64,000 nucleotides of DNA from Podarcis vaucheri (lineage: Eukaryota): NCBI GenBank assembly GCA_965113315.1, contig OZ220364.1, one strand, 5' to 3'. Position numbers and translations under genes: made by a program. The notes below the pieces were generated by a model. That model made no database searches. It was not told where the DNA came from and worked only from the letters and a program-made list of their open reading frames with translations. Shown piece by piece: positions 6,553 to 49,044 of this stretch; within the stretch, counting starts at the first letter, position 1; the number at the start of each line of letters is the position of its first letter.

Positions 6553-8018
6553 TACATGTTTACTCTAAATCTCACTTGGTGGGGCTTGTTCCTAGCTTAG
6601 TGTGCCTAAGATTGCATCCTTAAAGATTAAAATGCACTCATCTGTTTATCCTGGTAGATAAAAAGGAGCTATTACCCAACTTGGCATCCTTCTCTGCTGG
6701 TTTCAGACTCATACCCCAACACTCCAGTTGTGCAGAGCTGTGATATTTGTGAAGAGCATCTTATGTCATTGTCACTATAGTGACATCTTACGGAATGGAC
6801 TGCTGCCCAGTCTTCAGAGCACATGATTTGCACACCAGGTTCAGTTTCCAGCATCTCTCGACAGGGCTGTGGAATTGCCACTGTCAATCATTGTAGGAAA
6901 CTAGATGGGCCAAGGGCTGCTTCCTGTCTCCCTATTCAACTTCTGTTAGACTACTGTTTCGTCCGTTGACTGCAGAAGCCTCTCTCGTAATTTTGCACTG
7001 CAGTACTTAAAGCATGCAATGCACCCATGCATTAACAAAACACCACCAGTTCATTCTGCTGTACAACCCCTCTGGCCACACTGGCCCTCCTTTCTTCACT
7101 GTGATAAAAACTTTGCATGTTATGATGACTGTTGCCTGCCTCCCAGGGCCTTGCAGAGCCAGGCAGAGGCCCTGGCCAGGTAGATAATGTGCCCCCCTTT
7201 TTTTTACCCTGGGGATAACTGAAGTCTTACAAATAAGTAAGTATATAAATAATTTTCACAAATGTTACGCTGACAAATAATTTTATTTCAAGGCTTGAAC
7301 TGTATCTGCAGTACAAAATGGAAAATATAGATAAATATGCTGACTGAGGCCCCCTTTGGAATCGGAGGCCCGGGCCAATGGCCATATGCCCCCCCCCCCC
7401 CGTCTGGGCCTGCTGCCTCCACTTCATAAGCTGAATGAGGCTAGTTGTGACATTTTGTCTGAGTGCAGCCTTTAAATGCCAAATCGTTCTTTATTTGCTG
7501 ACCCAGCAAGTCACAGGCTCAACTATACGTAAGTTTCGGGCTCAGTTGCGTATAACTGCTCTTATCGGGCTAATCATGTCAGAGAAAAGCTTACGTATTC
7601 TGCTATAATGTGGTCAGACACAAATAGCATCAAAGATACTTCTCCCGAATTCAGATCTCATGGCAAGGACAGTGTGGGAAGGAACCAGCAATAATAAAAC
7701 CCAAGCGTAGGTGGTATTAACTTTCCCTTATTTCCTTTTTGTTATGGCAGTGGGCTGAAGCAATCTTGTCTACAGCAAAAGTGAGAAAACAGAAACAGTC
7801 CACCGAACTCTGAAATGACTAGATGTTGATCACATCCTGATAACGGGTTCAAAGGAGTTACTGACATTGCTCTTGCCATATTCTGTGACATGTACAGAAA
7901 GCAACGTTTTAAAAGCTTAAAAGTGAAAACTTCTAAGCCCATTTTGGAGGGGGAACTTTCTCCCTTTGTGCAATTTGCAGTAGCCTTTGTTGAGCAGCTG
8001 TAGTTTGACAGTTTAAGG

Positions 8019-8154
8019 CAGGCATAGGCAAACGCAGCCTTCCAGATGTTTTGGGACTACAATTCCCATCATCCCTGACCACAGGTCCTGTTAGCTAGGG
8101 ATGATGAGAGTTGTAGTCCCAAAACATCTGGAAGGCAGAGTTTGCCTATGCCTG
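8019..8154. mobile_element. Palindromic hAT-type MITE
   Basis: TIR CAGGCATAGGCAAAC / GTTTGCCTATGCCTG; near-perfect full hairpin; 8-bp TSD GTTTAAGG / GTTTAAGT. Confidence 0.9.
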
Positions 8155-11100
8155 GTTTAAGTGCAGGTGGCAGCAACCATGAGCTTGGGATGCATATCCC
8201 AGCCCTGTCCATGGTTCCTTTTGTTTGGTTTTTTTTTACCTTATATTTTTATTGTCCATGGTTCCTTTTGGATGTGGGCCACTGTATGAAACTTCTAGTA
8301 GAGTTCACTAGTAGAATTCTATCAACCTTAAGTTTCAGTTATGAAATATAGTGACAGGATAAGTGCACTAATGAAAGGTGGTTGCCATTGAAGATCCCTG
8401 CAGATGCCACAACACTTCCAAAGTTCTATTTTTTAAACTGCAAATTCTCAAGTTAGGGCTCAAGAAAGCTGTAAATAGATGCCTTACTAAAGTGTTAGGG
8501 TGGCTCTTTCTCTTTCCTCCCTTGCCCAACATTATTTGTCCCATCTCCAAAATACTCTTTGATCCATAGCTCTTTTTGTTCCTGAACTTTCCTAGCTGTC
8601 TCCAGAATCTAGTAGCTTCCGGCAAACCTAACCAAAAGCGCTCACATTGTCAAGATTACAGTGACACAGAGTTAGCGCTCCTTTCTCTTTTGTGTAGAAT
8701 ACTTTCCCTTCTTGTATAAGCTGATAGACTCAGCCACTCTTCTTTTTGTTTTTAATAGCTCTTTTGGGGGCTAGCAAACTGGGAAAGTTTTGGGGGTGAA
8801 ATGACTAATCTAGCATACCACCAGTTGATACACTTGCCTGAGTGCAAGAACCACAGTGGTAATTTGCTCAGCAGCAGCAGCAAAGTTGTGTACAATGTTT
8901 GGTTGGGAATAGTGCACAGCAAGTCATATCAAAACTTAGTGGGGTGTTTCCGCAGTGGCCTCACCAGTGGCCAAAGATTGCTACTAGGAGCTTGCTGAGG
9001 GCGTGGAGGCCCTGGACCACAAGAGAAATGGAGCTGTGAACATTGCAGTGTCAAAAACAATGTAGCCCAACCAGCTTCTCTAGCAGGGACACTGACGTCT
9101 GCTAACTAAGCCATCCTTCTGGGTTCCTTTTCTGTCATTATCTTGGTATGGGGAAAAACACAGGCATGCACTTTTAGACCCTTCTCCCATGCATCTGCAT
9201 CAGAGGAGTAAATAATCTTTAGCTTTTCGAGGTGAAAGAAACTATGCAGCTGGCATTGGTAAAATATATGCTTTCAGAAATGGAACAGGTATTGCTCACT
9301 TGTTGGCCACATTCACACAAAGCCAGATTTTGACTTCTGCTGCTTCAAGATAGCAACTCTTTCTCTGCATTAAAAGGTCTGGTTGTGGAAGGCCTTTGCC
9401 TTGCTTATGCTTATAAAAGATTTTGTATTCCTTCCTTAAATTGTTTTTTTAATGAGTTGGGGAAGCAAATAAGCTGTTCAGTCCCTCCCAAAATATTTAC
9501 TCAGTTGTCTTTGCCTACTTGGACAGTTTTGATAATATCTTTGCCCAGTTTTATCAAGACATGGAACAGCATGCTCTGGCAAACCTTGGGGGGAAAGTTT
9601 AGGAGCCAGGTCATCTCGGGGTCAGTTCTGATGTTTCTCCTTTAGTGACAGAGAACACATGAGCAAGGGATGGTTACAAGTAGATATATTACATTACTCA
9701 TTTATAAGAATGTTCGTCCTAGTCTAACTTTACTTTGAAACATGTGGATGAACATCACCTGTGCCAATGAAATTTGCATTAGCTTTGCCATCCCCAAAGA
9801 ATAATTGCCTCATCAAATGCAAGGTACAAACTCAAGAAGGATGTTCTCAGTGTAGGTGTTGTCTGTGGTCAATAGCTGTTTTCTGCTTTCTTTAGGCTAA
9901 TAAGTGACCTCAACATTTGCTTACATCTCTTTTGTCATACTACATCCACAGGGTTACAGAATATGAATCACAATGGCAAAAAACAAAAATAACTGAGTTC
10001 ATTCCATTTCTGAAAGCAATATGAACTGGCCCTGTCATTTGGTCAAGTGAGGCAGCTACCTCAGGTGGTGGATGCCAGGGTATGTGTGTGTGGAGTGATG
10101 GCAAAATGTTTGAGGAAAAAGCTGTGTGTACCAAGTTATGTCTTTTGCCCTCAAGTGCAGCGGAGGGCGTCCTGGTCACCTGTGTTCAACTGGCAGCCCA
10201 GTCAGTTAGCTCTGTGTATGAAAAGAAATTGACACAGATAACAACATGTCTTGGGCTGGCCCTCCTATTTAAGGATGCTTCCAAAAGACAAAACTAAGGG
10301 GCAGTTCTCAGCTATTGGCATCTGTGTGTCCTCTGTCGGTTGCAGAAATAAACACTGGAAGAAAGATTGCGGCTGCTGCACTCTTTCCTTGGTCCTGTAA
10401 TTGCTGCCCTACCTACAGGTAAGGGGTGGTTTGACACAGCATTATGCCCAAACTTGGGCTTATGATAGATCTCATTCCAGGTGAGCCACAAACTGTAACC
10501 ACAGTTTGTTCTTCGCTCACCACTCATGGTTTGTCTGGGAAAGATGAACCATGAACCTGGGTTTGGCTGTGACCCTAAACTAATCTACAGCTTAGCTCTG
10601 GGTAGTGCAGTAGCAGCAGGACCAAACCCACACGTTTGCTCATTCACACTAAGTTTTGACAACATTATTGTGTGAACTGAGTCTATTTATAGCCATACTT
10701 GATAAGATTATAGAGGCAGATAAATCTTTAAGTCTGTGAGGCAGGACAAGGTTTAGGAAGGACCGAGTGTCCACTTTTGGATTCATCCAGTGTTAAATTG
10801 TGAAGAAGCAAGGTACTTTAGCAAACTGTCATTATTTTCTGGATCTCAAAATGCTGCCCAATATAAAACCAGCATGTACTATGAGCAAGGCATAATAACA
10901 TACGGTCTTAAATATGGGGGCGATGACAACCATTCCTTGACTTAAAACTTTTTGCAAATGCAGCATTTTTTCCTCATGTGCACATTTCTGCTCTAAGAGA
11001 TGTGTGTTTTGTGCACTTTTCTTTAGAAAACTGGCTTTCTTGAGAACCTGAGTACAAAATTTACAAAACGCAAGAGACATTTCTCAGACTTGCAGGTGGC

Positions 11101-19959: not shown

Positions 19960-20219
19960 CTGTATTTTTTGTTCTATAAGACTCACTTTTTCCCTCCTAA
20001 AAAGTAAGGGGAAATGTGTGTGCGTCTTATGGAGCAAATGCAGGCTGTGCAGCTATCACAGAAGCCAGAACAGCAAGAGGGATTGCTGCTTTCACTGCAC
20101 AGTGATCCCTCTTGCTGTTCTGGCTTCTGAGATTCAGAATATATTTTTTTCTTGTTTTCTTCCTCCAAAAACTAGGTGCGTCTTGTGGTCTGGTACGTCT
20201 TATAGAGCAAAAACTACGG
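19960..20219. mobile_element. Tc1/mariner MITE with CCGTA-type TIR
   Basis: CTGTATTTTTTGTTCTATAAGAC ... GTCTTATAGAGCAAAAACTACGG TIRs with TA flanks; shares subterminal sequence with the 12376 copy. Confidence 0.85.
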
Positions 20220-32876: not shown

Positions 32877-33039
32877 GAAATCACAACCAGAACCAAAGAG
32901 AGAGAAGGAAGCGAAGAAGCCTACCATCAAGAAGCCTCTGAACGCTTTCATGCTGTATATGAAAGAGATGCGGGGGACAGTCATTGCTGAGTGCACCTTG
33001 AAAGAAAGTGCAGCCATCAATCAGATATTAGGAAGGCGG
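32877..33039 (+). CDS. TCF7: TCF7 HMG-box exon 1 ([54 protein letters not shown])
   Basis: TACTAAC branch point at 32840-32846, pyrimidine tract, AAG acceptor and CGG|gtaag donor; 163 nt. [22 protein letters not shown] is the TCF7-type HMG box. Confidence 0.98.
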
Positions 33040-35199: not shown

Positions 35200-35307
35200 T
35201 GGCACGCGCTGTCACGGGAGGAACAAGCCAAGTACTATGAACTGGCCCGCAAGGAAAGGCAGCTCCACATGCAGCTCTACCCCGGCTGGTCTGCAAGAGA
35301 TAACTAC
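35200..35307 (+). CDS. TCF7: TCF7 HMG-box exon 2 ([36 protein letters not shown])
   Basis: ctgtttcag acceptor and TAC|gtgagt donor; 108 nt. Canonical TCF/LEF HMG C-terminal half. Confidence 0.98.
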
Positions 35308-41708: not shown

Positions 41709-43354
41709 TGAGTGATTGGATTTATATACTGCCTTTCAGCATAAGATCTCAGGGCAGTTCACAGAATAAAATACAGGATAAAAAGCAAGTAAATAAGTAA
41801 AACAAAACAGCAAAATATTAACCCCCACTTCCCACAGGCACATTTTAAAGGCTGTAGAATATTAATCAGTCAAAGGCAAACACTTACCTGTTCTTCCCAT
41901 GTATTTTATTCAAGTTGCCACCCCTGGACATAGGGGTGAAATAACGGGGTTGTATCTAACTCTGTCCATGTTGAACAGACTTCTGCATGTGTGATGAGAC
42001 TTCACCTTCCTTTCCTTCCCCCTGCAGCTCTCTACACACCCTCAAATCGGTTCTGTAACCCATGGGGATGTTCCAGCCAGATTTTGAGGGTTCATAGGGG
42101 GCTGCAGGGGGGAAGAGAGGAAGACTAAAGTTCAACAGCCTTAGCAGACGTCTGCTCAGGCGACGTTGGATTCTGCTCACTGAAAACACCAGCGTGGATG
42201 TCTTAAGTCTTTTGCAAAAAGGCTTCCTTAATTAATGCATGGTCTCTTGCTCTTGTGTTGCTATAGCTACTTTTCTAATTTCCTTTCCTAATAGCTCTCC
42301 ACTGACGCATCTTATTTGAAGACATTTCTGTTAGGCTGCTGCTTTGTGTTTTGTTTTTGTTTTTTGTAAGTAAAGAAATATTAACGTCCCAAAATGTAGA
42401 GTTTTATTAAGAACAAATACAAGGGCATCATTTCCCAGTACTCTTTCTATATGCTATTAAAAAGTGATGTTCACTAAAAGGGTTGGTCAGCAGAAGACTT
42501 TCCAAGTCTTCTGGAGATAAAACAACCTGATGGAAAATGTGCCAAGCACAGCAGAGGGTGGGGGAATCAACATGGCTTCACAATCCACAGGGAGATCCTG
42601 CACATGAACTGCAGCTGTGCATGGCCACACTCGATCCAATTTAAATATAAAGAGCAGGTTTCCCCTAGGAAAGGAGTGGGGCAAGGGGGAAAGCGCTCTA
42701 ACCTGTGCTTTCTAGGCATGGGACAAGTGGAAGTGTGGATGAGCCCTTAATGCCTCCTTCACCTCCTTCTAGAATGGGAGCAGGGGAGGAGGCTGCAGGG
42801 GAAATCAGCAAAAATTCTACTTTTCCATTAGCAAAAGCTTCTGCTGGATCAAAAGCCCTTCCCAGAAGTGCACCGCTGGATGTGGCCCACTTGAGGTTTG
42901 GTGTGTGTTTTGGCCCCTCCTAAGTATCTGCAGGATTTTCAAGAGGTGCTTCATGGTGTGTGAAGACTAAGCAGGGATGACCTGCTAGCTGGCTACAACT
43001 ATTCTGCCCGTAAACCCACAGTACTGTTATTATTTTTTACAACAGATGTGACCCAAAATAGTAAATACCCAATGGTTAAAAAAAGAAAATAAATGTATGT
43101 CTGCTTCCTCCCTCCAAGGCCTTCAAAATTCATCTGCCATTTTGTGACTCGAGGCGCTTTTAGTTTCCCAGGTTCCTTTTCAGCTGCACAAGTGGCTTGT
43201 TTTAATCAGCCGGGTTGGGGTGCTGTTCTCTGTAGAGGCTCTCTGCTAGGTTGTTTTTCTATCTGCTTCCTGATGTGCTTTGTGTACGTATTTGGTGCAT
43301 TGTTTCAGTGCTCCCCGCAGCTGCTCTTTTAACGCTTTCCCCCTTGCTCTTCAG

Positions 43355-43447
43355 TCTTCTTCAGGCTCTTCGTCCCGTGATCACACAAAGTTTAACTCAG
43401 GGCCCCTGGAATTCAGCAGCACCTCGGGGCCGGTTTCTGCGGCAAGG
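43355..43447 (+). CDS. Candidate alternative in-frame TCF7 cassette exon (SSSGSSSRDHTKFNSGPLEFSSTSGPVSAAR) between the HMG box and basic tail
   Basis: tttaac branch-like site, pyrimidine tract and ttcag acceptor; strong AGG|gtaagc donor. 93 nt, open in phase 0, matching the host intron phase. CpGs retained. No homology recognised and no transcript evidence. Confidence 0.55.
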
Positions 43448-44783
43448 GTAAGCGAATTCTGCAGCGAATGTCCTTCTGCATTACGGCAGTGAGAGTCTGT
43501 AACCATCTGCCACTCATGCACCCACCTAACCCAGCGTTGGCTGCAGAATTCCAGGAGCCCTGAGCTTTTCCATGGCCATAGAATTGCTCATTGGCTGTGG
43601 AATTTGTTGAGTTGAAGGGGAACAATCAGTGGGCTATGTGTGCTTGTGGCGAGCTTGTGCATCAGGGAAGCGAGTGGACGCTTCATGACAGCACTTTCCT
43701 TTTTTTAGACAAATAGGTCGTTAATGTCTCATCAGCTTCAAAAACAAAACCATTGCCCTTGGGAGCATGGTTTCGGGGGAAACCCTTGCACAGAACTGAA
43801 CAAATAAATGGAGGGTTTGCAGGTTGGACGTGTGGCTTTCCTTTAAAAGCAGTAAAAACAATGCATCCATGACCTGGAACATATTGGCCTTGCACAGGGT
43901 CAAAGGTGACCACCAAGAAATACATTTTTTTTGGAGTGGCAATTTCATTTTGAACACAATCAGCCTCCTGAGCTGCAAATGCTGTGGACATTATTTTATT
44001 TAAATTTGAATCGGATGTAGCAAAGTAGACAAAGGATGGGTTGTTTGCATCCCACAAGGAAACAATGCAGACTGTACTGATTTGATGTGTCATCGCACAA
44101 ATATATATTTTTTAATAACAATGGGGTTGCTCTTTCTGGATCCAACCAACAAAGGTCCATCTGGTCCAGCAGACAGAGCCTTCCAGGAAACCCACAAGCA
44201 AGGCATGAAGGTAGTGCCCGTCCCCTTGTTTGTCCCCAGCATCTGGTAATGATCATGGGTTGTGAAGGTTTGTGTGTCTTGCACATACATATTACCTCTC
44301 TTAAGATACTACTGTCCATGCTAGGATTTTGTCTTACCTGTGGCTTTTGCTAGTCAGCTTGTGCGCTAAGGTGACAGCCCATGCATTCTAACCCCCTTCC
44401 TTAACTGAATTCCATTCCTACGCGGCGTGTACATGGATAAGCCACCTTGGCTTTTTGCCTCAGCCAAACTGAAAGGGAGGAAGCCTTAAGGGGCTCTCCA
44501 GAAGTCTATCCATAGGTCTTCTGCCTTCCCCCATCCTAGTAACTTATTCAGGTTGTCAGAGTCATGCATGTTTTGTAGCCCACCCTATCCCCAGGGAGAG
44601 CAATAGTAAACAGAGCAATTGTTGTGTTAATCCAAAAAGGCTAATGGGAGAGGCTGGTACTGGTTCCCCTCTCGCCTACTGGTAGTTGATGCTTTCTAGT
44701 GGAAGCAGCTGGTAAAGCAGCTAGAAATCTGGCTTTTGGTTCTTCTTGGTAACTGGTGGCAGGAGGACCTGAGCTTTTCTTAG

Positions 44784-44954
44784 GGGAAGGGTCGGGGCTC
44801 AGTGGCAGAGCACCTTCTTTGAATGCAGGGGGTCCCAGATTCAATCCCTGGCAACTCTAGGTAGGGCTGGGAGAGACCTCCGGTCTCAAATCCTGCAGAG
44901 CTGCTGAGTCAGTGCAGACAGTCTGACTCAGTACTGTATAAGGCAGCTTCCTAT
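44784..44954 (+). mobile_element. tRNA-derived SINE (Squam2-like); more decayed relatives near 30945-31090 (+) and 39215-39385 (-)
   Basis: GCTCAGTGGCAGAGCA A box, GATTCAATCCC B box and ...ATAAGGCAGCTTCCTAT tail. Confidence 0.7.
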
Positions 44955-45068
44955 AGAGAGAAATAGCTCGATGTGCCGTCTTTCTTGACTGCAGCCAACA
45001 GTCAAGGCCTCCTTAAGCCTGTTATTTGGTGCAGGACATCAAGCTCTGACTTGGCATTTTATCTTCCG

Positions 45069-45336
45069 CTTCTCCTGCGCAAAGAATGAGGGGCGCAATT
45101 TGCAACAGAGAAGCTCTGGAAGGAGGAAGGTGTTTAACTTTCCACTAGTCTGTTTTCCTCTGCAACTCAGCAAGCTGCTGTGTTTCTGCTGCAAACAGAA
45201 ATGGGAGAAAGCAGCTGCAGCTAAGGGGCAGCTGAAGAAGATAGCTGGCAAGGAAGGGAAGGGTGAAGTGCTCTTCTCCTGCCCAAAGCTCCTCTGTTGC
45301 AAATGGTGCCCTCTAGCCCAGTTTGCAGAGGAGAAG
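45069..45336. repeat. Long imperfect inverted repeat, probably an old MITE
   Basis: Arms of about 60 nt; perfect 13-bp core 45098-45110 / 45292-45304. Confidence 0.7.
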
Positions 45337-47014
45337 TAGCTGTTGGGCTTTCAGGTTAGAGCACAATGTGCCGTACCGTCTTTAGAACTCGAGGCCAGTG
45401 GAGGAGCACATAAAAAATCAAATGCAAGTAGAAAGCTCGTACATCAGAGAGAACACTTGGCTAGAACCTTGTTCCTTGTCATGCTAGCTTTCCATGTGCC
45501 GCAACATTCGATGTAGGGAAGCATTCAGATATGCAAAACCCCACGGCCATTCCAATGGGAAATGTCCATAAGGATACCACCACTAGCTGTCTTAGAATGT
45601 TGGAGTTCATTTTTCAGCATTGGAGAGGCAGTCCAAAAACTGTATGTGGCAACTCAAGACAGTTTCTCAAAACCATACACATGGATTTAAAACATGTTTC
45701 CATCTTACAGCCGACACTGGCAGAGCTTGTAAGACAGTAACTGCCACCAGCATTATGTTTTAATTGTAGTGTTGGGCAGCTGCGTAATAATGTAGGCCTC
45801 CCAATGCAAGCAAAATCAATACTATGTGGAGAGGAGTGTAAGGAAAGACAATCTGGTTTGATTTTGCCTGCTTTCATCAGCGAAGCGGTTTTTGTGCCTC
45901 GCTAATGACAAACATGTTTAAACACTGTTTGAACTTAAAATGGAAAAGGCTTTGTTGTGCTCCATGTTTGCAATCTCGTCTCTAGAAGTGAAAACAAAAA
46001 AGCTGCAGTCCTCAACATGTTTACAACAGCGAGTGTGTCCTCTTGAGGGACTTCCTTCTGAATGAAATAGGACTGGGACTGGGCTGCCCAAGCTTGCAAA
46101 TACTATGCACTTTTCAAGCTGCTAGTGAGTGCAGTTTCTGTACCCTAGAAAAATCTGAGACTAGCATGAAGACCTCACAAATGCTGGTGCAAGAAAGATG
46201 TGAATAACGAAAAACAGACCTTAGGTTTATCTCACTTTTATTTGTAATAGTTACTTTGACATTATTCTTCATTCACGGAAAGTTGCTTTGGTGACCAAAG
46301 CTCATTTTTAACTATGATGTTCCATGTGCTGTTCCTGAAATACGGTCCAATTTCTCCCCCCGCTTAAAAGACATTTTAAAAAGAGACCTTTTTCATTGAG
46401 AAAGTAACTGTGTGCAGGCTGCAAGCCTGCTGAAAATAAGATCACTGTCCACTTTATTCCACCCATGCACAGCAACCTTTTGCTGGAAATACATTCCTTC
46501 ATGTATGCACAGAATGCAGCTGGTCTTTGTTCAGATGGCTGGTGTGTGTGCATAAAGAAAGTTAGGTTTGCTCCTTAAGCCAGGTCATTGCACCGTGGTG
46601 GCAGCACACTTTTTTCTGACACTTTGGGACACAGGAAAGACTGTGGCACAATCCTCATCTATGAGCTCAATATATCTTAGCTGTGGGGAAGAGTGGCAGT
46701 CTTTCCGGTATTTCAAAATGTAAGCCAGAGACAATCTATGTGCAGGTAGGCATGAAAAGGGGACTGGATTCATACCAATTTGTTCCAGCTATGGTCAGGG
46801 ACCATAATATCTTAGAGAAGTATTTTATCAGAGACAATGAACAAGAGTGCAGTTTGGGATTTTTTTTTTGTGTGTGTGTGTACTGTAAAGGATGGCATAA
46901 AAATTTAATGAATAAACTACCAGTATGGTGGGGCAGTGCCATTTATGAGGAGGGTCCCTGGCCTCCCCATGCTCTCTATTTTGACCTCTTTTTATATTTG
47001 CAATCTGCCTTTAT

Positions 47015-47376
47015 AAGGTAAAGGTAAAGGTACCCCTGCCTGTACAGGCCAGTCGTGTCCGACTCTGGGGTTGCGCGCCCATCTCGCTTAAGAGGCCGGG
47101 GGCCAGCACTGTCCGAAGACACTTCCGGGTCACATGGCCAGTGTGACAAGCTGCATCTGGCGAGCCAGCGCAGCACACGGAAACGCCGTTTACCTTCCCG
47201 CTAGTAAGCGGTCCCTATTTATCTACTTGCACCCGGGGGTGCTTTCGAACTGCTAGGTTGGCAGACGCTGGGACCGAGCGACTGGAGCGCACCCCACCGC
47301 GGGGATTCGAACCGCCGACCTGACGATCGGCAAGTCCTAGGCGCTGAGGTTTTACCCACAGCGCCACCCACGTCCC
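47015..47376 (-). mobile_element. Sauria SINE, full length, with 12-bp TSD
   Basis: Close reverse complement of the 22708 copy; TSD AATCTGCCTTTA at 47002-47013 and 47381-47392. Confidence 0.93.
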
Positions 47377-48120
47377 TACAAATCTGCCTTTAGCATATGT
47401 TAATTTCAGCCACAGCATAAAGCACATGAAATGTTGATGTAAAAAGTAGCCATAATAAATAGCTAACCAGTCTTGGGGGGGGGGGAGAGAGTTCCCAAGT
47501 AACATCCAATACTAACTGATGTTGAGAAGGGTGGGTGTATGTATGTGTACACACAGAGAGGTTTCTTGCTTTTAACTGTAATCGTAGCCTTTCCTTCTTT
47601 TACATCTATAGGTCCCAGGGGCTCCTCTCCCAAATCAGCTAAACTGTTGCTTGCAAAATGTAGGTCTGGAAATGGCAGACTGTCAAAAGCTCTACCAAGC
47701 TGGTGCCACTCTCAGCCAGCTGGGCAGAATGCTGCAGTATGAGTTAATGAGGGGTTACTTCTGAATTAAGAATTCAAAGCAATAGGTGGATCCATCTCAT
47801 TTGTGGTTTTCTTTCAGTGTGAAGAAGCATTTGTGTAAAAATGATGTACATTTTAAACAACATGTCCCTGACTGCCTGTAGAGCATATTTTGACCACTAG
47901 GGGGAGGGTGCTACCTGCAATTGCCAATTGCACACCATACAAGGGGTCTAGATTAGCAAGAATCCATGGTGACCAGAAATGAAGCAGGCAGTTTGGAAGG
48001 GATGAAAGTAGGAGCCTTGGCCACAACCCCCTTATTCCCTCTGGAAAGATATGCCTGTATTTGTTCACTTATGATTTGTGTTCTCCCCCCCCCCCCTTTT
48101 CTCTTTCTCTTTGATTCTAG

Positions 48121-48169
48121 GGGAAAAAGAAAAGACGAACAAGAGAAAAGCAGCAAGACTCCAACTCAG
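48121..48169 (+). CDS. TCF7: TCF7 basic tail / NLS exon (GKKKRRTREKQQDSNS)
   Basis: Long pyrimidine tract with ttctag acceptor and G|gtaaat donor; 49 nt, phase 0 to 1. Confidence 0.96.
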
Positions 48170-49044
48170 GTAAATCCACTGGTGCAAACTCCAGTACATT
48201 ATCTGGTAACCAACGCTTTGTTTATGTTGGTAGGGGATTAGTTGAGGCAGCTGAACAATAGCTATAATCTTCCTTTGGATTTGCATCTGTGGCTTAATGT
48301 GACTGGGGTAATCCATATCTATGCTAATACTACCTCCATTTCATCTGTAGACTGGGTTGCTATCTGTGCTTATAAACTTTAATCTGTGTTTCATTTTCAT
48401 ATGAGACCTAACTGCTATTTCTTCTAGCTTTGCTGCTATCTGCAATTGTCTCTCCTGTCTGCTCTCCTCTGACATTAGCCTCAGAGAAAAGGAATACTAT
48501 TCAGCTCATTCCTAGTTGCATTTTGACACATCAAATTTAGCCCCCTCCTCTTGCCATTAACTTTTATGGTTGTTACCGTTGTAGTTTCCCAATCACCTAG
48601 TTCTCTGCAAAGATGCAGAAAGCAAAAGGTCTTTAAAATGCAGTACAGTAGCAAATTCTTAACCTGTTATCCAAGAAGGGACTATTTTGCCATAAACTAG
48701 ATTTCTAGGGCAGGCAGAATCCTAACCCACAGAGTCTTACACATCATATCTTTGGGTGCTATCAGGCTAAAACATCTCATCAGCGCAAGCATTTCCACTT
48801 GTGAAATACAAACCCCCACCCCCATGCACACTCTCCCCAAATCTGCTCCATAGGATTGAGGGGAACTCCTAGAACAAAGTTAGGGGGAACACAGAGTGAG
48901 AGAAAGACCAACTGCACAAGCAGTGCTTTGGATAGAAGAAGAGATGGTAAGGGAACAGCTAGCTACAGATAGAACAGGTGAGGTCCCTGTGGACTAGAGG
49001 TGGGCAAATGTTGGCAGAAAAAATGTTGGTGGAAAAAAGAAGGC

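What the first reader, a model, noticed from the sequence alone, without database searches (positions are those of the whole stretch)
43396..43564. Competing RNA duplexes around a candidate TCF7 cassette exon: possible structure-based splicing switch
Seen: the intronic element 43534-43564 is complementary to two upstream sites. (A) 43540-43564 pairs with the exon body 43396-43420 at 23/25 bp (mismatches C43404/A43556 and A43415/A43545), which loops in the 5' splice site. (B) 43534-43551 pairs with 43454-43471 at 17/18 bp (perfect 12-bp core GAATTCTGCAGC/GCTGCAGAATTC, two G-U pairs); this helix starts at intron position +7, directly after GTAAGC. Both use the same 12-nt core, so they are mutually exclusive. 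Established: competing pairings control exon choice in Dscam1 (docking site/selector) and other genes. Inference: A masks the exon and favours skipping, while B frees the exon and U1 site and favours inclusion. I know of no such switch described for TCF/LEF genes.
Basis: partly seen in the sequence, partly recalled or inferred. Interest (0 to 1): 0.85.

Follow-up and report, generated by a model that had tools for sequence, protein, structure and literature searches.

The report
Conserved exon-intron RNA duplex, TCF7 exon
A real, already annotated 93-base optional exon of the lizard TCF7 gene sits beside a strongly conserved intron element that can pair either with the exon's core or with the start of the intron; this probably tunes splicing, but the proposed two-state switch is untested.

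Summary
Helix A (43396-43420 with 43540-43564) has 23 of 25 pairs. Helix B (43454-43471 with 43534-43551) has 17 of 18 and starts at intron +7. Both use the same 3' strand.

The "candidate" exon 43355-43447 is real. A contig in a related species joins 43447 to the known downstream exon at 48121 across a GT..AG intron. The 31-residue insert lies between SARDNY and GKKKRR in TCF7 isoforms of at least 13 squamates and one caecilian, so the exon is not new.

A snake contig that translates straight through the locus shows no inferred change at any of the 69 paired bases, but 8 at unpaired bases of the same 169 nt (P about 0.013). The upstream intron is at least 18% different.

Folding gives helix A at equilibrium (pair probabilities 0.94-1.0). 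Helix B appears only while transcription is incomplete or when the exon arm is blocked.

The region is single-copy, so it is not a MITE.

Not shown: covariation (no orthologous DNA could be fetched), pairing in vivo, or any effect on inclusion. A-to-I editing and protein-only regulation remain live rivals.

Verdict: a plausible new instance of a known kind of splicing control. The scan had already noted the exon on this same stretch (s1-852222).

The parts
35200..35307 (+). Upstream constitutive TCF7 exon, second HMG-box exon (WHALSREEQ...SARDNY). It ends in phase 0 and is followed by GTGAGT.
   Evidence: Joined directly to the cassette exon in P0001 and P0005-P0018.
43335..43354 (+). Polypyrimidine tract and acceptor AG (43353-43354) of the cassette exon. 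A second AG lies at 43363-43364.
   Evidence: The protein junction DNY|SSSG in annotated isoforms fixes the acceptor at 43354|43355.
43355..43447 (+). 93-nt in-frame Ser-rich cassette exon of 31 aa, inserted between the HMG box and its basic tail/NLS.
   Evidence: Spliced joint 43447|48121 in run X20.
43396..43420 (+). Helix A 5' arm, inside the exon. It encodes the invariant core (N)SGPLEFSS.
   Evidence: The core is unchanged in 13 of 14 squamate sequences.
43448..43453 (+). 5' splice site GTAAGC.
   Evidence: GT..AG joint.
43454..43471 (+). Helix B 5' arm, intron +7 to +24.
   Evidence: EFCS is conserved in Anolis, Lerista and snake read-through translations.
43472..43533 (+). Loop between the helix B arms. 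It is conserved, but less so than the arms (at least 5 inferred changes against snake), and holds the in-frame stop at 43490-43492 that ends the read-through isoform.
   Evidence: P0001 ends ...ALRQ.
43534..43564 (+). Shared 3' arm: 43534-43551 pairs in helix B and 43540-43564 pairs in helix A.
   Evidence: No inferred change against snake.
43568..43600 (+). Small conserved hairpin just downstream. It contains a fourth, degenerate copy of the motif (43591-43604) and is more stable on the sense strand because of G-U pairs.
   Evidence: (D3).
48121..48169 (+). Downstream TCF7 exon (GKKKRRTREKQQDSNS: basic tail/NLS).
   Evidence: It is the acceptor of the joint.

Best explanation
The 31-nt intronic element 43534-43564 is a conserved cis-acting RNA element of the TCF7 pre-mRNA. 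It works by base pairing with the core of the 93-nt cassette exon (helix A, 23/25 bp, 27 nt upstream of the 5' splice site). Shown here: the exon is real and alternatively used; the complementarity is exact as described; both arms and the block around them are conserved between an iguanian-like lizard and a snake; helix A dominates the predicted ensemble. Inferred: once formed, helix A locks a third of the exon into double-stranded RNA and loops out the 5' splice site. This would hinder exon definition and keep the exon a minority isoform. Helix B forms first during transcription, because its 18 nt of 3' strand emerge before the last 13 nt needed for helix A. Helix B, or a protein on the exon arm, would delay or prevent helix A and so allow inclusion. 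The outcome decides whether TCF7 keeps its basic tail/NLS directly after the HMG box or has it displaced by a 31-residue spacer.
For: Exon reality: joint 43447|48121 across GT..AG, and the insert sits between SARDNY and GKKKRR in RefSeq/UniProt isoforms of at least 13 squamates plus a caecilian. Complementarity and non-chance. Thermodynamics: helix A pair probabilities 0.94-1.0. Duplex energies are -42.9 kcal/mol for A, -52.4 for A extended and -25.9 for B. Helix B forms with P 0.89-1.0 when the exon arm is blocked. MFE snapshots show helix B at transcript ends 43545-43560 and a flip to helix A at 43564. Conservation: the snake ORFs P0003/P0004 align in frame and ungapped over 43304-43612, with 27 consecutive identical codon equivalents at 43523-43603. 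Of the inferred differences, 0 fall in 69 paired bases and 8 in 100 unpaired bases of the helix span (P=0.013). The one change inside an arm is at the G.G mismatch of helix B. Inferred divergence is 18% in the upstream intron, 8% in the loop and 0% in the 3' arm. Sense-strand hint: the G-U pairs in helix B and in the downstream hairpin exist only on the + strand (-17.5 vs -11.5 kcal/mol). Single copy: depth in DNA run X18 is flat at about 16-17 over 43200-43599, while true repeats nearby reach 10^4-10^6.
Against: There is no compensatory substitution, because the arms are invariant in what I could see, and an invariant pair says nothing about pairing. The conservation evidence comes from protein translations of one snake lineage, so third-codon-equivalent positions are hidden. 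The whole 43448-43603 block is conserved, including unpaired parts and 39 nt beyond the helices, so ordinary protein-binding splicing elements could explain it. The exon arm is also under coding constraint. The fold z-score of the 271-nt sense segment is only -1.86, while the antisense strand scores -2.79. The predicted change in 5' splice site accessibility is small. The local helices predicted inside the loop are broken by the inferred snake changes. Run X20 is only guessed to be RNA, and the shorter side of its joint is 28 nt.
Confidence: 0.4

Rival explanations
1. The conserved downstream block is an ordinary intronic splicing enhancer/silencer cluster read by proteins. The complementarity to the exon is a relic of an ancient inverted duplication, and it persists only because each copy is conserved for its own reason (coding in the exon, protein binding in the intron).
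For: Conservation covers the loop and a further 39 nt beyond the helices. The motif GAATT recurs five times in 43409-43604, and TTGGCTG(C/T)(A/G)GAATT recurs twice (D3), which looks like repeated binding sites. No covariation was seen.
Against: The differences against snake avoid exactly the paired bases (P about 0.013-0.026). A 23/25 complement that survives the split between snakes and other lizards is most simply explained by selection on pairing. No specific known protein motif was identified.
Confidence: 0.25
2. Helix A is a substrate for site-selective A-to-I editing by ADAR: the exon paired with an intronic editing-complementary sequence, as at GRIA2 or HTR2C. Editing could recode Ser (AGC at 43415 or 43418) to Gly or Glu (GAA at 43410) to Gly, or could edit the intronic A43556, which lies opposite C43404.
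For: An imperfect 25-35 bp exon-intron duplex with a conserved intronic partner is the classic architecture (established knowledge, recalled). It includes an A.C mismatch (43556/43404) and an A.A mismatch (43415/43545). Conserved complementary regions are enriched in editing sites in human (PMC8052449).
Against: No A-to-G difference in the arms appears in the rows shown, although most rows were not shown and no matched DNA/RNA pair was available. The favoured A.C mismatch has its A on the intronic side, so it would not recode. No S-to-G or E-to-G variant is seen in any retrieved sequence, but those are mostly genome-derived.
Confidence: 0.12
3. The block is a DNA-level regulatory element (an intronic enhancer of TCF7) whose palindromic content reflects dimeric transcription-factor sites rather than RNA pairing.
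For: All helix A pairs are Watson-Crick and therefore symmetric between strands. The antisense strand folds at least as well. The arms contain TTCCAGG, half of a GAS-like site, and there are two TTGGC half-sites (by inspection only).
Against: The conserved block starts at the exon and decays abruptly after 43604, as expected for splicing-associated flanks. One arm lies inside coding sequence. The G-U pairs favour the sense RNA.
Confidence: 0.1
4. A neutral palindrome or MITE relic with no function.
For: Two other strong inverted repeats exist in the same 64 kb, so this genome does generate palindromes.
Against: It is single-copy in the window and in a relative's DNA run (flat depth). No target-site duplication is seen at the ends (by inspection). 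The sequence is conserved in a snake, far beyond neutral expectation.
Confidence: 0.03

Closest known systems
Conserved complementary regions (PCCRs) of human pre-mRNAs (Kalmykova et al. 2021, PMC8052449)
   Same: A pair of conserved complementary segments within one pre-mRNA, close to a splice site and tied to an alternative exon. The catalogue reports that such pairings tend to suppress exons and splice sites and respond to transcription speed.
   Different: Here one arm is exonic and the helix spans the 5' splice site rather than flanking the whole exon. TCF7 is not mentioned in that paper's main text. The lineage here is squamates.
Dscam1 exon 6 docking site/selector system, with ATE1 and DNM1 in mammals (recalled from memory)
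   Same: One element is complementary to more than one upstream site, so only one pairing can form at a time.
   Different: There is no array of mutually exclusive exons, only a single cassette exon. The two 'selectors' are the exon body and the first intronic bases of the same exon. The two pairings are very unequal in stability (-42.9 vs -25.9 kcal/mol).
GRIA2 R/G and Q/R sites and the HTR2C exon 5/intron 5 duplex (ADAR substrates that also affect splicing; recalled from memory)
   Same: An exon paired to a conserved complementary sequence in the downstream intron, an imperfect duplex of a few tens of base pairs, with the 5' splice site within or beside the structure.
   Different: No editing has been shown here. 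The loop is 119 nt and the 5' splice site is in the loop, not in the stem.
MAPT exon 10 and SMN2 exon 7 (TSL2) stem-loops at the 5' splice site; FGFR2 IAS2/ISAR stem (recalled from memory)
   Same: Local RNA structure next to a regulated 5' splice site sets the inclusion of a cassette exon.
   Different: In those cases the 5' splice site itself is in the stem, or in FGFR2 both arms are intronic. Here neither helix covers positions -3 to +6.
Annotated TCF7 isoforms carrying the 31-aa insert (for example Anolis carolinensis A0A803TGJ4 and RefSeq isoform X6; Lacerta agilis X2; Ahaetulla prasina X3)
   Same: The same exon at the same position between SARDNY and GKKKRR, 79-100% identical.
   Different: These are automatic gene models. 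No publication on the exon's function or regulation was found.

Membership tests
Genuine TCF7 cassette exon | AG...GT boundaries, length a multiple of 3, open frame in the phase set by the flanking exons | tested here: met
   AG at 43353-43354 and GT at 43448-43449. The exon is 93 nt, the upstream exon ends in phase 0, and there is no stop.
Genuine TCF7 cassette exon | Spliced junctions to both neighbouring exons observed in transcripts or models, and isoforms without the exon also exist | tested here: met
   Joint 43447|48121. DNY|SSSG and AAR|GKKK junctions are present in P0005-P0018. The isoform numbering (X2, X3, X6, X11) implies alternatives without it.
Conserved structure-regulated exon (PCCR-type exon-intron duplex) | Two complementary segments in the same pre-mRNA with a stable predicted duplex | tested here: met
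   23/25 bp, -42.9 kcal/mol, pair probabilities 0.94-1.0.
Conserved structure-regulated exon (PCCR-type exon-intron duplex) | Both arms conserved across distant species | tested here: met
   No inferred change in either arm between the window and a snake, seen at translation level only. The exon arm is unchanged in 13 of 14 squamate proteins.
Conserved structure-regulated exon (PCCR-type exon-intron duplex) | Compensatory (covarying) substitutions | not testable with these tools
Conserved structure-regulated exon (PCCR-type exon-intron duplex) | Disrupting the pairing changes inclusion and restoring it rescues | not testable with these tools
   Requires a minigene or antisense experiment.
Docking site/selector competing-pairing system (Dscam1 type) | Cluster of mutually exclusive exons, each with its own selector | tested here: not met
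   A single cassette exon lies in a 12.8-kb intron, and both upstream partners belong to the same exon.
Docking site/selector competing-pairing system (Dscam1 type) | One element complementary to two or more alternative partners, with mutually exclusive pairings | tested here: met
   43534-43564 pairs with 43396-43420 or with 43454-43471 through the same 12-nt core.
ADAR exon/ECS recoding substrate | Imperfect exon-intron duplex with a conserved intronic complement | tested here: met
ADAR exon/ECS recoding substrate | A-to-G differences between RNA and DNA of the same individual | tested here: inconclusive
   Only contigs of other species were laid, none of the shown rows lies in the arms, and most rows were not shown.
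MITE / transposon-derived palindrome | Many copies in the genome | tested here: not met
   Two matches in the window, both being the arms themselves. Summed contig depth in DNA run X18 is flat at 16-18 across 43000-43799, against about 11,000 and over 10^6 at real repeats.
MITE / transposon-derived palindrome | Target-site duplication flanking the terminal inverted repeats | tested here: not met
   The flanks ...AAGTTTAA and CTTTTCCA... share no 2-, 4- or 8-bp duplication (by inspection).

The most novel reading that the evidence does not exclude
A kinetic RNA switch conserved across squamates since before the snake-lizard split, with an exon old enough to be shared with a caecilian. During transcription helix B forms first, directly after the U1 site, and holds the shared 3' strand. 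Completion of the last 13 nt lets the far more stable helix A invade and lock the exon core. Polymerase speed, or a factor bound to the exon arm, would therefore set how long the exon stays definable. That timing would choose between three forms of TCF7: canonical, a form with a 31-residue spacer between the HMG box and its basic tail/NLS, and a truncated NLS-less read-through form ending at the stop 43490-43492.
Probability: 0.15. Interest if true: 0.7.

Novelty: new member of a known kind. Interest (0 to 1): 0.45.

Why it matters
TCF7 (TCF-1) is a central Wnt effector and T-cell fate regulator. Its basic tail directly after the HMG box is needed for nuclear import and for high-affinity DNA binding and bending (established knowledge). 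An optional exon that pushes the tail 31 residues away would make a functionally different protein, or a truncated one if the intron is read through.

If inclusion is set by a conserved RNA duplex, this gives a simple, mutable handle on TCF7 isoform choice in reptiles. It would also be a clean natural example of an exon-intron pairing kept unchanged since snakes and other lizards diverged.

The finding is limited in scope. The exon was not found in annotated bird, turtle, crocodilian or mammalian proteins, the principle is already known from other genes, and nothing functional has been tested.

Tried and rejected
- **Rfam:** a scan at E<=1 over 42000-45000, and a gathering-threshold scan of the whole window, found nothing at the site. 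The only hit is a tRNA-like SINE head at 44788-44859.
- **MITE or other repeat origin:** rejected.
  - A degenerate 27-nt pattern for the 3' arm gave 0 hits in metagenome contigs.
- **Second reading frame across the arms:** a search with the antisense open frame 43384-43587 gave no candidates.
- **Lerista model P0002:** its apparent similarity downstream of the exon (E=6.5) was judged noise and not used.
- **Local helices inside the 119-nt loop:** the inferred snake substitutions break them, so they are not part of the claim.
- **Earlier findings by sequence:** nothing to show.
- **Literature:** no paper links TCF7 with competing RNA structures. The Tcf7 exons regulated by MBNL1 (E5; E10, the C-clamp exon) are different exons.
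- **Spliced model:** Exons were searched singly, by reference.

Full report
**Setting.** The window carries TCF7 on the + strand.
- The HMG-box exons lie near 32.9 kb and at 35200-35307 (...[11 protein letters not shown], ending in phase 0).
- The basic-tail exon is 48121-48169 (GKKKRRTREKQQDSNS).
- The C-clamp exons lie near 49.8 and 52.2 kb.
- The finding sits in the 12.8-kb intron between 35307 and 48121.
- A CR1-like ORF, a tRNA-derived SINE and the protein matches show that the genome is a squamate reptile.

**Observation.**
- Helix A pairs 43396-43420 with 43540-43564 at 23 of 25 positions. The mismatches are C43404/A43556 and A43415/A43545.
- Helix B pairs 43454-43471 with 43534-43551. 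It has a perfect 12-bp core, one G.G mismatch (43466/43539) and two G-U pairs.
- The 5' splice site GTAAGC is 43448-43453, so helix B begins at +7.
- The arm motif occurs only at these two places in 64 kb, against none in 100 shuffles.
- Inverted repeats of this quality within 200 nt number three in the window and none in eight simulated sequences. The other two are short-loop perfect palindromes of a different nature.

**The exon is real and already annotated.** I searched the 31-residue translation of 43355-43447 alone, by reference.
- phmmer against 1.84 billion representatives returned three hits. They are Anolis carolinensis "Transcription factor 7" (UniProt A0A803TGJ4), a Lerista edwardsae model, and an unnamed Logan contig ORF.
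- A word search with the Anolis region added TCF7 isoforms from these taxa: A. carolinensis (X6), A. sagrei, Pogona, Sceloporus, Lacerta, Varanus, Salvator, Eublepharis, Heteronotia, Ahaetulla, Pituophis, Crotalus, and the caecilian Microcaecilia at 66%.
- In all spliced models the insert sits exactly between SARDNY and GKKKRR. This fixes the acceptor at 43354|43355 and the donor at 43447|43448.
- Independently, a contig of run X20 (a related species, guessed to be RNA) joins 43447 to 48121 across a GT..AG intron. An unspliced contig of lower depth also crosses the donor.
- No bird, turtle, crocodilian or mammalian protein appeared. The search is word-limited, so this is weak evidence of absence.
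- The UniProt Anolis model reads through the donor to the stop at 43490-43492. That gives a form without the basic tail.

**Conservation of the intronic element.** No orthologous DNA could therefore be aligned. Two Logan ORFs (P0003, P0004) gave an indirect view.
- Their exon is identical to that of the snake Ahaetulla prasina.
- They translate straight through upstream intron, exon and downstream intron. They align to the window in one frame without gaps over 43304-43612.
- Converting amino-acid differences into minimal base changes gives the table below.

| Segment | Minimum inferred divergence |
|---|---|
| Upstream intron 43295-43354 | 18% |
| Exon 43355-43447 | 5% |
| Loop 43472-43533 | 8% |
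| Shared 3' arm 43534-43564 | 0% |
| Next 39 nt, 43565-43603 | 0% |
| Beyond 43604 | Collapses (44% over 43604-43642) |

- Within the 169-nt helix span, all 8 inferred changes fall on the 100 unpaired bases and none on the 69 paired ones (P=0.013).
- The single change inside an arm hits the G.G mismatch of helix B.
- Caveats: this is one lineage pair, third-codon-equivalent positions are invisible, the exon arm is also coding, and invariant pairs cannot prove pairing.
- Among 14 squamate exon sequences the arm codons vary once (Salvator, Ser to Asn), against 10 of 23 columns elsewhere in the exon. That difference is not significant.

**Folding.**
- In the equilibrium ensemble of 43330-43620, helix A has pair probabilities of 0.94-1.0 and helix B is absent.
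- Duplex energies are -42.9 kcal/mol for A, -52.4 for A with its ragged extension, and -25.9 for B.
- Blocking the exon arm costs 18.6 kcal/mol of ensemble energy. Helix B then forms with P 0.89-1.0.
- Minimum-energy snapshots of growing transcripts show helix B when the 3' end is at 43545-43560 and a flip to helix A at 43564.
- The two states are therefore real alternatives but very unequal. Helix B is a transient, or it needs help from a factor.
- Predicted accessibility of the U1 site is 0.36 with helix A, 0.58 with helix B and 0.31 with neither.
- The overall fold z-scores are unremarkable: -1.86 sense and -2.79 antisense.
- The G-U pairs of helix B and of the conserved small hairpin 43568-43600 exist only on the sense strand, at -17.5 against -11.5 kcal/mol.
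- Local helices predicted inside the loop are broken by the inferred snake changes, so I discard them.

**What it is not.**
- It is not a multicopy MITE. Summed contig depth in a relative's DNA run is flat (16-18) across the hairpin, while the SINE at 44.8 kb and the repeat at 47.0-47.4 kb reach about 10^4 and over 10^6.
- No target-site duplication flanks the arms.
- It matches no Rfam family.

**Interpretation.**
- My best reading (about 0.4) is a conserved exon-intron duplex that restrains definition of the cassette exon. Helix B or a protein on the exon arm would act as the antagonist.
- The strict balanced-switch version I put at about 0.15.
- Rivals: a protein-read intronic regulatory block with relic complementarity (0.25), an ADAR exon/ECS substrate (0.12), a DNA enhancer (0.10), and neutral sequence (0.03).
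- It works like the conserved complementary regions catalogued in human genes, which tend to suppress exons and respond to polymerase speed (PMC8052449). It shares the one-site-two-partners logic of docking/selector systems.
- It is not a member of the docking/selector family, because there is no array of mutually exclusive exons.
- No paper was found that connects TCF7 with such a structure. The MBNL1-regulated Tcf7 exons are different ones.

**Verdict.** The exon is already known to annotation. The RNA element is a credible new instance of a known mechanism, and it awaits covariation and mutational tests.

Noticed in passing
window 43448-43492: If the donor at 43448 is not used, the frame continues for 14 codons (VSEFCSECPSALRQ) to a stop at 43490-43492. 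The UniProt Anolis carolinensis model A0A803TGJ4 has exactly this ending, which gives a TCF7 without basic tail/NLS or C-clamp. An AATAAA lies near 43805. In the snake the stop is replaced by Trp.
   Followed up: partly
window 20055-20133: A near-perfect hairpin with a stem of about 30 bp and an 11-nt loop (-58 kcal/mol, z about -10 on both strands) in a TCF7 intron. It has pre-miRNA-like geometry but no Rfam match.
   Followed up: partly
window 8013-8160: An inverted repeat with 64-nt arms (91% complementary) and a 20-nt loop. It looks like a transposon-derived palindrome.
   Followed up: no
window 47000-47400: An extremely high-copy repeat (summed contig depth over 10^6 in a DNA run). A contig of run X23 (organism J) skips about 47001-47381/47448, so the insertion appears to be absent in that related species.
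   Followed up: no
window 44788-44859: A tRNA-like sequence (Rfam tRNA, 41 bits) at the head of a multicopy element (depth about 11,000), that is, a tRNA-derived SINE.
   Followed up: no
window about 32956-32975: The first HMG-box exon reads [13 protein letters not shown]. Every other squamate TCF7 retrieved has YMKEMRAKVIAEC, so there are two adjacent substitutions in an otherwise invariant DNA-binding helix. This could be a real lineage change or an assembly error.
   Followed up: no
window 46224-48999 (runs X19, X20, X23): Three small runs (65-143 million letters) from three studies cover 46.2/46.4-49 kb evenly at 8-57x but barely cover the rest of the intron. This looks like target-capture data centred on the 48121 exon, or a stably retained intron part. 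Only X20 shows an exon-specific bump and the spliced joint.
   Followed up: no
P0016 (Pogona vitticeps isoform X6): This isoform carries a further 28 residues (VTTLPWKSMGTEYKELLLDEELLNILRK) between SARDNY and the Ser-rich exon. This suggests another alternative segment or donor in the same intron.
   Followed up: no
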